Below, in pieces: positions 34,228 to 63,036 of a stretch of 64,000 nt of DNA (the stretch's first letter is position 1; each line of letters starts with the position of its first letter). Origin of the DNA: Podarcis tiliguerta (lineage: Eukaryota); the NCBI GenBank assembly GCA_965153285.1, contig OZ229119.1; one strand, 5' to 3'. Both the position numbers and the translations under genes were made by a program. The notes beneath the pieces are model-generated. The model worked only from the letters and a program-made list of their open reading frames with translations. It made no database searches and was not told the DNA's origin.

Positions 34228-34610
34228 CAGAGCTTTCCAAACTCTGTGTTGTGACACATTAGTGTGTCAGCTGCAGTGTGTAGCGGTGTCGCATGAACGC
34301 TTCCCATGCTCCTCCTGGGGCTGGAAAGGGGTTAGTTTAACCTCCAGTTTGCTAGTAAAACTGAATTACTGTGTCACAAAATGATGCATGTCTAAAATGT
34401 GTGTCACCCAGTGGCGTAGCGTGGGGGGTGCAGGGGGGGCCGGCCGCACCGGGCGCAACATCTGGGGGTTAGGTTTAGGGGGCGCAAATGCACGGGTTAG
34501 GGGGTGTAAATCCACGGGTTAGGGGGCGCAAATTACTTGCCTTGCCCCGGGTGCTGACAACCCACGCTACGCCACTGGTGTCACCAACATGAAAAGTTTG
34601 GAAAGCTCCG
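34228..34610. mobile_element. hAT MITE hosting a nested insertion
   Basis: TIRs cagagctttccaaact / agtttggaaagctccg (15/16). Confidence 0.8.
34409..34577. mobile_element. Young hAT (Tip100-like) MITE, 169 bp
   Basis: Perfect 17-bp TIR cagtggcgtagcgtggg / cccacgctacgccactg; perfect 8-bp TSD gtgtcacc (34401-34408, 34578-34585); CpG-rich. Confidence 0.93.
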
Positions 34611-60145: not shown

Positions 60146-60627
60146 CATCACCTTGCCAACAAAGGTTCGTATAGTAAAAGCTATGGTTTTCCCAGTAGTG
60201 ATGTATGGAAGTGAGAGCTGGACCATAAAGAAGGCTGATCGCCGAAGAATTGATGCTTTTGAATTATGGTGCTGGAGGAAACTCTTGATAGTCCCATGGA
60301 CTGCAAGAAGATCAAACCTCTCCATTCTTAAGGAAATCAGCCCTGAGTGCTCACTGGAAGGACAGATCGTGAAGCTGAGGCTCCAATACTCTAGCTACCT
60401 CATGAGAAGAAAAGACTCCCTGAAAAAGGCCCTGATGTTGGGAAAGATGGAGGGTACAAGGAGAAGGGGACGACAGAGGACGAGAAGGTTGGATAGTGTT
60501 CTTGAAGCTACCAGTATGAGTTTGACTAAACTGCGGGAGGCAGTGGAAGACAGAAGTGCCTGGTGTGCTCTGGTCCATGGGGTCACGAAGAATCAGACAC
60601 GACTAAACAACTAAACAACAACAACAA
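60146..60627 (+). mobile_element. RTE-BovB LINE, 5'-truncated, with (CAA)n tail
   Basis: ITLPTKVRIVKAMVFPVVMYGSESWTIKKADRRRIDAFELWCWR...SLEGQ..KLRLQY...RRRGRQR...KLREAVEDR.AW.ALVHGVTK is the characteristic BovB C-terminus. Confidence 0.95.
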
Positions 60628-60724
60628 GTATTTGCTTGTGTTCTAAAATAAAAGAAAAAGACTCGGTTGAGATAGCTCATGGCTACTAGTGCTTTTGCAG
60701 TGCTTTTCTCGCTTGATTCAATTA

Positions 60725-61907
60725 CCGTATTTTTCGCCCTATAGGACGCACCGTCCCATAAGGCGCACCTAGTTTTTTGGGGGGGAAATAAAGGGAAAAA
60801 ATTATTTCCCCCCCAGGCGCGGGGTTGGGGAAGCCCGAGCTTCCCCCGACCCCAGCCCCCAAACAGGCAGCTCTCTGCAAGCCGTGGGAGCCCAGTGCTG
60901 GCTCCCGCTGCTAGCGGAGAGGTCCGCGAAGCCTGGACGCGCTGAGCTCAGCGCGCGCAGGCTTCAGCATGCAGGCAACTCTCCGCCAGCAGCGGGAGCG
61001 CTCCCGCTGCTAGCGGAGAGGTCCGCGAAGCCTGGACGCGCTGAGCTCAGCGCGCGCAGGCTTCAGCATGCAGGCACCTCTCCGCCAGCAGCGGGAGCGC
61101 TCCCGCTGCTAGCGGAGAGGTCCGCGAAGCCTGGACGCGCTGAGCTCAGCGCGCGCAGGCTTCAGCATGCAGGCACCTCTCCGCCAGCAGCGGGAGCGCT
61201 CCCGCTGCTAGCGGAGAGGTCCGCGAAGCCTGGACGCGCTGAGCTCAGCGCGCGCAGGCTTCAGCATGCAGGCACCTCTCCGCCAGCAGCGGGAGCGCTC
61301 CCGCTGCTAGCGGAGAGGTCCGCGAAGCCTGGACGCGCTGAGCTCAGCGCGCGCAGGCTTCAGCATGCAGGCACCTCTCCGCCAGCAGCGGGAGCGCTCC
61401 CGCTGCTAGCGGAGAGGTCCGCGAAGCCTGGACGCGCTGAGCTCAGCGCGCGCAGGCTTCAGCATGCAGGCACCTCTCCGCCAGCAGCGGGAGCGCTCCC
61501 GCTGCTAGCGGAGAGGTCCGCGAAGCCTGGACGCGCTGAGCTCAGCGCGCGCAGGCTTCAGCATGCAGGCACCTCTCCGCCAGCAGCGGGAGCGCTCCCG
61601 CTGCTAGCGGAGAGGTCCGCGAAGCCTGGACGCGCTGAGCTCAGCACGCGCAGGCTTCAGCATGCAGGCACCTCTCCGCCAGCAGCGGGAGCGCTCCCGC
61701 TGCTAGCGGAGAGGTCCGCGAAGCCTGGACGCGCTGAGCTCAGCGCGCGCAGGCTTCAGCATGCAGGCACCTCTCCGCAAGCAGCGGGAGCGCTCCTGCT
61801 GTTTGCGGAGAGGTCCGCGAAGCCTGCATTCGCCCCATAGGACACACCCAGATTTCCCCTTCATTTTTGGAGGGGAAAAAGTGCGTCCTATAGGGCGAAA
61901 AATACGG
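60725..61907. mobile_element. Tc2-like Tc1/mariner non-autonomous element (1183 bp) with internal tandem array
   Basis: Perfect 27-bp TIR ccgtatttttcgccctataggacgcac (60725-60751, 61881-61907); TA TSD on both sides; no transposase ORF. Confidence 0.95.
60902..61826. repeat. 99-bp GC-rich minisatellite, about 9.3 copies, two palindromes per unit
   Basis: Unit starts at 60902, 61001 ... 61793; interior units identical; 71/99 GC; 12 CpG per unit. Confidence 0.97.
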
Positions 61908-62700
61908 TACTCATCACTATGAAAAGTTCAGATGCATTTTAACAGCCCCAGGATGGTTGACCATTAGCATTTCACAATGAACCCTGTACAGTTAAACAGT
62001 TAACAGCATGCCTTCCTGAAAAAAGCAGCTGCTTTGATATGCTGAACAAAGACCTTCACTCTTTCTATCTGGTCCAATGAGTCTGAGAAGTTATCAGGCT
62101 AGGAAAAAATCTTTTGGTGTTCAAAGGCTCTGTGTTTTCTCTAGCCTGGCTTTTTAGCAGCAAGAGAAAAAGCAGGGTATATTAGTGAATTGCCATGGTC
62201 CAGAAAGGCATGGAGAGTGGCTTCATCCCATCAACTGCAGCTTCAGGCAAATGACTCACCTTGCATGCAATAAAATGTACTATAAACATGAGTGTACAGG
62301 AGTATATAAACATCTCCCTCTTCCTAGACAGTCACTACATTGAGCTAATACATTGCTTGCAAGGAAATGACAGTCTGAATTACAGATTTGCATTAGTTAC
62401 TTGGTGCATCATTCCAGAATATTGCAAGTGAGCATGGATACATTTTGTGGCAATGCTTCTGTGCAAGATTCCTCCTGACCCCATTGGATTTTTTCCCAGT
62501 TATGTATATAAGACACAACTTTTTGGGTGAGGGTGGAATCTTTTATTATCATTGCCAAAGTTAACGAAACATCTGACCACGCAACTTTACAAATTTGCTT
62601 TGAATGTTTTATGTGGGGTAGTAAAATCTATGAGAGCAGTGTTGGAGCAAACAGTACTTTTTGCAAATCATAGTAACTTAATAAAAATAATAGTCTAGTA

Positions 62701-63036
62701 CAGGGGTTGGTAACCTAAGGCCCATGGGCCACAAGTGGCCCATGGGGTTGTTTAACCAGCCCATGGACCCCTGCTACCCATTCACGGACCCCCCCCCCGC
62801 CCTCTCGGTCAGCTCCCATGCACCGTGCTAAACCGGCACGGAGCAGAGCAGGGACCTCCTTCCATGATGCTGGCAGGCTTTCCATTGGCTGCAGGAAGCT
62901 CCTGCAACCAATGGGAAGCTGCGCACGCCTCCTCCATGCCAGAAGGGGCTCCGGAAATAGCGTTTGCACCCTGGCCTACTGCGGCATCTGCAGGACTGTG
63001 AACCAACTCAAGCCACAAAAACTTTGCTGACCTCTG
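62701..63036. mobile_element. hAT-type non-autonomous element abutting a truncated short hAT MITE (63037-63150)
   Basis: caggggttggtaacct ... actttgctgacctctg termini with ggccc-rich subterminal repeats; TSD unclear. Confidence 0.7.

What the first reader, a model, noticed from the sequence alone, without database searches (positions are those of the whole stretch)
60725..61907. Young MITE carrying a tandem array of double-palindrome 99-bp units: a mobile CpG island / satellite seed
Seen: perfect 27-bp TIRs and a TA TSD enclose 9 full units plus a partial one. Each unit has a 46-bp palindrome (acctctccgc-c-agcagcgggagcgctcccgctgct-a-gcggagaggt, one mismatched pair) and a 38-bp palindrome (gaagcctg-ga-cgcgctgagctcagcgcg-cg-caggcttc), so 84 of 99 bp can pair. 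The array could extrude about 18 hairpins, with many alternative registers. It is 72% GC with 12 CpG per unit inside CpG-poor DNA. Established: MITEs with internal tandem arrays that seed satellites are known in other animals such as Xenopus and Drosophila. Inference: this is an active lizard family whose hairpins drive unit expansion during gap repair and which drops ~1-kb CpG-island-like, dsRNA-forming cassettes into introns near enhancers.
Basis: partly seen in the sequence, partly recalled or inferred. Interest (0 to 1): 0.85.

Follow-up and report, generated by a model that had tools for sequence, protein, structure and literature searches.

The report
Young lizard MITE with palindromic minisatellite
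A 1.2-kb non-coding cut-and-paste transposon landed recently at a TA site in a wall-lizard-type genome, and its GC-rich central hairpin has grown into about nine near-identical 99-bp palindromic repeats; this kind of element is known in frogs, clams and flies but I found no description of it in lizards.

Summary
There are perfect 27-bp TIRs (none expected by chance), a TA duplication and a 99-bp x 9.4 array at 99% identity. Each unit holds a 46-bp and a 38-bp palindrome and 12 CpG. The array is 71% GC with CpG o/e 0.94, against 41% and 0.19 for the rest of the window.

New here: contigs from three other lizard genomes (coded organisms A, B, D) cross the site with exactly 1,185 bp missing and a single TA left. 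So this is a true, lineage-specific or polymorphic transposon insertion.

Summed depth over the termini is roughly 10^4 times single-copy depth, and over the unit 10^2-10^3 times. The array's accidental ORF matches only four "hypothetical proteins" of Podarcis lilfordi on four contigs, each with the same 33-aa (99-bp) period. Arrays of this unit therefore exist elsewhere, in an independent assembly.

The array's left edge grades into the MITE's own diverged central hairpin, which favours growth in place over capture.

Not tested: hairpin-driven gap-repair expansion, dsRNA output, CpG-island behaviour, the Tc2/pogo assignment, TIR-free satellites and read-level array length. Tandem-repeat MITEs are known (Xenopus miDNA4 and Xstir, clam DTC84). 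First readers noted sibling elements elsewhere in this genome; those notes are unchecked.

The parts
60723..60724 (.). Left copy of the TA target-site duplication
   Evidence: The empty-site joint 60722->61908 leaves a single TA.
60725..60751 (+). Left 27-bp terminal inverted repeat; it contains the 8-bp palindrome CCTATAGG
   Evidence: 0 mismatches to the right TIR, 0 matches expected by chance.
60752..60768 (+). Second, degenerate direct copy (13 of 17) of the 17-bp TIR core CGCCCTATAGGACGCAC; possibly a second transposase-binding site (inference)
60778..60815 (.). Left subterminal hairpin made of a G-run and a C-run, with 14-bp perfect arms
   Evidence: 14-nt inverted match, 60778-60791 against 60802-60815.
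60866..60976 (+). Diverged first unit. Its left hairpin arm is about 80% like the unit and carries a 9-bp loop insertion; its last 76 bp are identical to the unit. This is the array's left edge, grading into family backbone.
   Evidence: Loose-end consensus of other copies at 60861.
60977..61768 (+). Eight homogeneous 99-bp units. Each is a 46-bp palindrome, a linker, a 38-bp palindrome, then a 12-bp tail containing GCATGC.
61769..61826 (+). Last, partial unit (58 bp) with 4 differences. It carries the A...T state at palindrome positions 11 and 36, the state that is fixed in organisms B and D.
61829..61899 (.). Right-end foldback: an inner copy of the TIR core (61831-61847, 15 of 17) lies inverted relative to the right TIR
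   Evidence: (74 nt, 73% complementary).
61881..61907 (-). Right 27-bp terminal inverted repeat
61908..61909 (.). Right copy of the TA target-site duplication
60884..61840 (+). 318-codon open frame through the array. It is an artefact of 99 = 3 x 33 with one stop-free frame, not a gene.
60300..60625 (+). Context: very high-copy retroposon tail of BovB-tail / Sauria-SINE type (named from my own knowledge), ending 99 bp upstream of the insertion site
   Evidence: summed depth 5-19 million against about 90-117 for single-copy flank.

Best explanation
This is a non-autonomous cut-and-paste DNA transposon (a MITE) that uses TA targets, as the Tc1/mariner/pogo superfamily does. It inserted recently into unique DNA, 99 bp downstream of a SINE tail. 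Its backbone is about 260-290 bp: two arms that carry the 27-bp TIR plus extra copies of a 17-bp TIR-core motif, around a GC-rich central hairpin. A 99-bp segment made of that hairpin plus a second palindrome has multiplied in place to about 9.4 tandem copies. I infer that the multiplying happens by replication slippage, unequal sister-chromatid exchange, or template switching during double-strand-break repair, and that the near-complete self-complementarity of each unit favours all of these. Unit number would then differ from copy to copy, and whole arrays would be carried to new sites when a transposase supplied in trans moves the element. The high CpG content is most simply explained by youth: there has been no time for CpG decay. 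Shown here: the anatomy, the insertion (from the empty site), the family's abundance, and arrays of the unit elsewhere. Inferred: the expansion mechanism, the source of the transposase, and ongoing activity.
For: Perfect TIRs and the TA duplication. The joint 60722->61908 skips 1,185 bp (the 1,183-bp element plus one TA). It was seen in contigs of X1 (organism A, depth 54), X5 (organism B, 1,945-bp contig, depth 84) and X8 (organism D, 1,115-bp contig, depth 117). Their flanks differ from the window by 6/375, 15/390 and 12/390. The empty site is clean, with no excision footprint, so it is the state before insertion. Summed depth over the termini is 1.1-5.4 million against about 84-117 for the single-copy flank, and over the unit 24,000-260,000. 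That suggests roughly 10^4 ends and 10^2-10^3 units per genome. Interior units are identical while both edge units are diverged, the usual signature of in-array homogenisation. The first unit's left arm aligns to the unit at about 80% with a 9-bp loop insertion. Other family copies continue past 60861 with a related hairpin arm (loose ends). So the hairpin belongs to the backbone. Four P. lilfordi predicted proteins on four contigs carry the same 33-aa period. There is no transposase or any other Pfam domain.
Against: No autonomous partner was seen, so the superfamily rests on the TA duplication alone. The filled allele was not shown in any run other than the assembly itself. No long read was laid, so the count of 9.4 units rests on the assembly. 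The origin of the second (38-bp) palindrome is unexplained. The depth sums are not true copy numbers, as the tool itself warns.
Confidence: 0.82

Rival explanations
1. Pack-MITE reading: the array or its unit was captured from a host CpG island or from a pre-existing minisatellite, as proposed for Xenopus miDNA4, rather than growing from the element's own interior.
For: The 38-bp palindrome has no counterpart in the backbone sequence at the array edges. First readers noted MITEs with 'captured' CpG-island cargo elsewhere in this genome (unchecked).
Against: The 46-bp palindrome's left arm is present in diverged form in the backbone and in other subfamilies. Depth falls gradually, not abruptly, from the TIR into the array. 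The unit's translation matches no real protein or exon.
Confidence: 0.1
2. The array length is an assembly artefact and the true element has one or two units.
For: No long reads were laid. Short-read contigs cannot resolve identical 99-bp units, and the middle of the array shows depth 0 only because of how multi-mapping contigs are placed.
Against: Assemblers usually collapse such arrays rather than inflate them. Two private substitutions (60978, 61646) mark individual units. The window has no N. An independent assembly (P. lilfordi) holds runs of at least 4 consecutive units.
Confidence: 0.05
3. The element is a functional, exapted cassette at this locus: a CpG-island promoter or enhancer, or a source of dsRNA or small RNA.
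For: It meets the sequence criteria for a CpG island. Either strand would fold into very stable hairpins. Family ends occur in RNA on both strands.
Against: The insertion is absent from three related genomes, so it is not conserved. RNA depth over the array is only about 1-30, and 64% of laid RNA reads run on into unrelated sequence, meaning other loci. All Rfam matches are generic hairpin hits far below gathering scores. High CpG is expected from youth alone.
Confidence: 0.06

Closest known systems
miDNA4, a Tc1/mariner MITE of Xenopus tropicalis that carries a satellite monomer or a variable array (Scalvenzi & Pollet, as summarised in PMC12628747 and PMC9659126)
   Same: A vertebrate Tc1/mariner-type MITE with an internal tandem repeat, present as one to many copies. 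It was proposed as a route from MITE to satellite.
   Different: No sequence relationship was tested. The miDNA4 repeat is described as flanked by AT-rich microhomologies and possibly captured. Here the unit is 71% GC, about 85% self-complementary, and appears to derive from the MITE's own central hairpin.
DTC84 / pearl-type tandem-repeat MITEs of bivalves (PMC3879986)
   Same: Flanking arms act as a 'cassette' around up to 5 core repeats. Each repeat has a palindrome, proposed as a hotspot for changes in array length. The elements are high copy.
   Different: DTC84 has a putative AA duplication, short inverted repeats and a linked microsatellite. Its palindrome is a small part of the unit, and its unit variants are ordered. 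Here there is a TA duplication and 27-bp perfect TIRs, the unit is almost wholly palindromic, and the interior units are identical.
Xstir/Xmix MITEs of Xenopus (Hikosaka & Kawahara 2004, via PMC12628747) and Tetris of Drosophila virilis (PMC4079207)
   Same: Tandem repeats derived from MITE or foldback-element sequence, with stem-loop formation invoked in their expansion.
   Different: In Tetris the repeats build the long TIRs themselves. Here the TIRs are short and the array is central. The superfamilies and target sites differ.
SINE-derived satellites in scaled reptiles (PMC10702118)
   Same: Interspersed repeats that give rise to tandem arrays in squamates.
   Different: Those derive from retroposons (SINEs), not from a DNA transposon.

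Membership tests
MITE of the Tc1/mariner/pogo (TA-target) superfamily | Terminal inverted repeats | tested here: met
   27 of 27 identical, none expected by chance.
MITE of the Tc1/mariner/pogo (TA-target) superfamily | TA target-site duplication, with a single TA at the empty site | tested here: met
   TA on both sides. The empty-site joint skips 1,185 bp in X1, X5 and X8.
MITE of the Tc1/mariner/pogo (TA-target) superfamily | No transposase gene; small backbone | tested here: met
   The only ORF is the array's stop-free frame, with no real Pfam domain. The backbone without the array is about 260-290 bp.
MITE of the Tc1/mariner/pogo (TA-target) superfamily | High copy number of homologous termini | tested here: met
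   Summed depth over the termini is about 10^4 times the single-copy flank in three genomes. This is a rough figure, not a calibrated copy number.
MITE of the Tc1/mariner/pogo (TA-target) superfamily | Autonomous partner with a DDE/D transposase and matching TIRs | not testable with these tools
   No access to the whole genome. None in the window. None among the scan's notes.
   No reference TIRs or Dfam/Repbase were available. The TIR string is absent from the searchable literature.
Tandem-repeat-containing MITEs | Tandem array between TIR-bearing arms | tested here: met
Tandem-repeat-containing MITEs | Unit number varies among family copies | tested here: inconclusive
   Four P. lilfordi loci show 2 to 5 or more units of the same period, but their TIRs could not be read. 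An unchecked scan note reports a 786-letter sibling with 99-bp units.
Tandem-repeat-containing MITEs | TIR-free satellite arrays of the same monomer ('satellite seed') | not tested
   Needs a genome-wide search.
CpG island | At least 200 bp, GC at least 50%, CpG o/e at least 0.6 | tested here: met
   About 1.1 kb, GC 0.68-0.71, o/e 0.91-0.94.
CpG island | Unmethylated in the germline; promoter-like chromatin | not testable with these tools
   No methylation data.
Foldback (FB-like) elements | Long terminal inverted repeats built of subrepeats | tested here: not met
   The TIRs are only 27 bp. The self-complementary array is internal: 67-77% complementary to itself, and the whole element folds at -588 kcal/mol.

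The most novel reading that the evidence does not exclude
This copy is one product of a still-active lacertid TA-MITE 'chassis' of about 10^4 copies. Its central hairpin repeatedly seeds new, almost wholly palindromic, CpG-dense minisatellites, and these lengthen in place and are then transposed. That would make the family a genome-wide generator of CpG-island-like foldback DNA in an amniote, with possible roles as fragile sites, satellite seeds or dsRNA sources. Palindrome pairing might be maintained across subfamilies: positions 11 and 36 are A...T in organisms B and D but C...A here.
Probability: 0.3. Interest if true: 0.65.

Novelty: new member of a known kind. Interest (0 to 1): 0.42.

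Why it matters
Recently active DNA transposons are uncommon in amniotes. This locus comes with its own empty site in relatives, which gives a ready genotyping marker and an upper bound on the element's age. The family offers a tractable vertebrate case for how a MITE's internal hairpin becomes a minisatellite and perhaps a satellite. It also shows how transposition can scatter kilobase-sized CpG-rich, cruciform-prone DNA through CpG-poor introns and intergenic DNA. On the practical side, the arrays have already produced spurious 'hypothetical proteins' in the Podarcis lilfordi annotation (CAI5785754.1, CAI5796585.1, CAI5764505.1, CAI7935575.1), and they would be called as CpG islands by standard criteria.

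Tried and rejected
1. Other family copies in the window: none. The TIR was searched at up to 3 mismatches and both arms by blastn.

2. Rfam: 49 hits, all generic miRNA or sRNA hairpin matches far below gathering scores (for example MIR1437 at 78 bits against 168). Rejected as structure-only noise.

3. Pfam on the array ORF: a SAP-domain 'hit' at E = 9e-6 with 0 individually significant stretches. It is a sum of weak repeats and was rejected.

4. Coding gene or captured exon: rejected. The only relatives are four repeat-derived P. lilfordi hypothetical proteins.

5. The TIR 23-mer in the metagenome, viral and prokaryotic genome collections: 0 hits. This gives no evidence either way on horizontal transfer.

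6. Literature searches for the TIR and unit strings, and for lacertid or Anolis MITEs with arrays: nothing specific. Anolis TcMar-N families exist (PMC3014272) but no sequence comparison was possible.

8. The bacterial promoter/terminator scan is irrelevant to a vertebrate.

9. ORFs of 110 aa or more across the window: the ten sent to Pfam gave no hits, so 'intronic' could not be confirmed.

10. The joints 60623-60627 -> 60722-60723 have short sides and unknown letters between them. I read them as other loci where a SINE tail lies near a MITE end, not as variants of this locus.

Full report
OBSERVATION. The region reads exactly as described. A 27-nt sequence beginning CCGTATTTTTCG lies at 60725-60751 on the + strand and at 61881-61907 on the - strand, with no mismatch. 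These are the only two matches in the 64-kb window at up to 3 mismatches, and 100 dinucleotide-preserving shuffles gave none. TA lies immediately outside both ends. Tandem Repeats Finder reports one array at 60901-61826: period 99, 9.4 copies, 99% matches, no indels.

In the register that begins with ACCTCTCC there are eight full units (60977-61768). Six are identical, and two carry one private substitution each, at 60978 and 61646. They are preceded by a diverged unit (16 of 99 positions differ, all in its first 23 nt) and followed by a 58-bp partial unit with four differences. The unit holds a 46-bp palindrome with one mismatched pair and a 38-bp palindrome with two. It has 12 CpG. The array is 71% GC with CpG observed/expected of 0.94; the rest of the window is 41% GC with 0.19. 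One unit, taken as single-stranded DNA, folds into the two predicted hairpins at -44.9 kcal/mol, z = -6.2.

This follows because an array of near-palindromes is itself 67-77% self-complementary.

IT IS A TRUE INSERTION. I laid Logan contigs of three whole-genome runs from three coded organisms, plus one RNA run, on 60300-62300. All three DNA runs hold a contig that joins 60722 directly to 61908. That skips 1,185 bp, which is the 1,183-bp element plus one TA, with 3 ambiguous letters at the joint.
- X5 (organism B): a 1,945-bp contig at depth 84.
- X8 (organism D): a 1,115-bp contig at depth 117.
- X1 (organism A): a contig at depth 54 with 40 nt on its shorter side.
The flanks of these contigs differ from the window by 15/390, 12/390 and 6/375.

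The empty site carries a single TA and no footprint. It is therefore the state before insertion, not an excision product. This confirms the TA duplication and shows the insertion is younger than the split from these lineages or haplotypes. I could not show the filled allele in any run. Whether X1 is heterozygous cannot be read from the output.

THE FAMILY. The single-copy flank sits at depth 84-117. Summed contig depth at 90% likeness or better is 1.1-5.4 million over the two termini, and it falls stepwise inward to 24,000-260,000 over the unit. The tool warns that such sums are not copy numbers. As orders of magnitude they suggest about 10^4 related ends and hundreds to a few thousand related units per genome. 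Most family members would then carry a different interior.

Unit variants differ between genomes. At palindrome positions 11 and 36 of the unit (window 60987, 60913, 61012), essentially all contigs of organisms B and D read A and T. That makes the 46-bp palindrome perfect. The window's homogenised unit reads C and A, a mismatch. Organism A holds both states, and the window's own last, edge unit has A...T.

The array happens to be open in one frame, because 99 = 3 x 33. I used that frame as a handle. Two searches of 5.8 billion predicted proteins returned only four entries. All are 'Hypothetical predicted protein [Podarcis lilfordi]', on four different contigs (CAI5785754.1, CAI5796585.1, CAI5764505.1, CAI7935575.1). 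Each contains the same 33-residue period, with five consistent substitutions per unit. They hold 2 to 5 or more copies, interrupted by stretches that are other reading frames of the same unit.

So arrays of this unit exist at several loci in an independently assembled Podarcis genome. It also places the window in or near that genus. First readers of this scan have flagged many sibling elements in this same genome, including one with 99-bp units, one with 118-bp units and a 2.1-kb array. Those notes are unchecked leads and I do not count them as evidence.

ANATOMY AND ORIGIN OF THE ARRAY. Outside the array, the left arm (60725-60865) carries three features:
- the TIR;
- an adjacent degenerate direct copy (13 of 17) of its 17-bp core;
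- a G-run/C-run hairpin with 14-bp arms.
The right arm (61827-61907) carries an inner copy of the core (15 of 17; the family's majority letters make it closer still) that lies inverted relative to the TIR. The right end can therefore fold back on itself.

The homology of the first unit extends left to about 60866. There the sequence aligns with the left arm of the 46-bp palindrome at about 80% identity, with a 9-bp insertion in the loop. Other family copies that leave the alignment at 60861 continue with a related sequence, 24 of 29 positions with one indel (loose ends). The central hairpin is thus part of the family backbone, and the array looks like a multiplication of that hairpin plus a second palindrome. 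Identical interior units with diverged edge units are the usual signature of homogenisation inside an array.

Among about 110 CpG in the array I see only one CpG-to-CpA change in the full units (61646) and one CpG-to-TpG change in the edge unit. The 'CpG island' character therefore needs no explanation beyond youth.

MECHANISM (INFERRED). A transposase supplied in trans recognises the TIR and the core motifs and moves the element by cut-and-paste into TA. Unit number changes in place. The likely routes are replication slippage at hairpins, unequal sister-chromatid exchange, or template switching while a break is repaired from a sister copy. From my own knowledge, break repair is known to expand and contract tandem repeats in yeast. 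Palindromes as hotspots for array-length change were proposed for DTC84 (PMC3879986), and stem-loop models for Xstir (PMC12628747).

EXPRESSION AND FUNCTION. Raw RNA reads of a related organism (G) cover the family's ends at depth about 20-170 on both strands, but the array at only about 1-30. Most reads are only 90-95% alike, and 64% run on into unrelated sequence, so they come from many other loci. This shows only that family members sit inside transcribed regions. Rfam gives generic hairpin matches only, all below threshold. I found no exon or domain-bearing ORF in the window.

COMPARISON AND NOVELTY. MITEs that carry internal tandem arrays are well documented:
- Xenopus miDNA4, a Tc1/mariner MITE with a satellite present as one to many monomers;
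- Xenopus Xstir/Xmix;
- bivalve DTC84 and pearl elements;
- Drosophila Tetris (PMC12628747, PMC9659126, PMC3879986, PMC4079207).
In squamates, SINE-derived satellites are described (PMC10702118). I found no paper on a lacertid MITE of this type, and neither the TIR nor the unit string occurs in the searchable literature. Dfam and Repbase could not be queried, so an uncurated entry may exist.

I file this as a new member of a known kind. Its distinctive points are a unit that is about 85% palindromic and CpG-dense, apparent birth from the MITE's own hairpin, very high family abundance in an amniote, and a documented empty site.

LIMITS. These were not tested: array length at read level, an autonomous partner and the Tc2/pogo assignment, TIR-free arrays, methylation, small RNAs, and polymorphism within the source species. 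Organism names were coded by the tool.

Noticed in passing
window 34409-34577 (TSD at 34401-34408 and 34578-34585): A second, unrelated MITE of 169 bp. It has perfect 17-bp TIRs (CAGTGGCGTAGCGTGGG), an 8-bp target duplication (GTGTCACC, hAT-like), and a GC/CpG-rich interior with a 22-bp unit repeated 2.7 times (TRF score 97). This is another small transposon with an internal tandem repeat in the same window.
   Followed up: partly
window 60300-60625: A retroposon tail ending in (AAC)n. It has a BovB-tail / Sauria-SINE look (my own knowledge). Its summed depth is 5-19 million against about 100 for single copy in three genomes, and it is abundant in RNA reads on both strands. This copy differs from the family majority at 12 or more positions.
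   Followed up: no
window 62700-63010: A GC-rich patch (GC 0.62) that starts with CAGGGGTTGGTAACCTAAGGCCCATGGGCC. This looks like the terminus of another interspersed repeat. It is not related to the MITE.
   Followed up: no
Podarcis lilfordi proteins CAI5785754.1, CAI5796585.1, CAI5764505.1, CAI7935575.1 (P0001-P0004): Four annotated 'hypothetical proteins' consist of 33-aa repeats that are translations, in several frames, of the 99-bp MITE unit. They are most likely annotation artefacts.
   Followed up: partly
window 60913, 60987, 61012, 60937 (unit positions 36, 11, 36, and position 10 of the 38-bp palindrome): At paired palindrome positions, related genomes carry states that pair (A...T, G...C) where the window's unit is mismatched (C...A, A...C). 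Organism A holds both states. This may reflect subfamily structure or selection for pairing; it is unexplained.
   Followed up: partly
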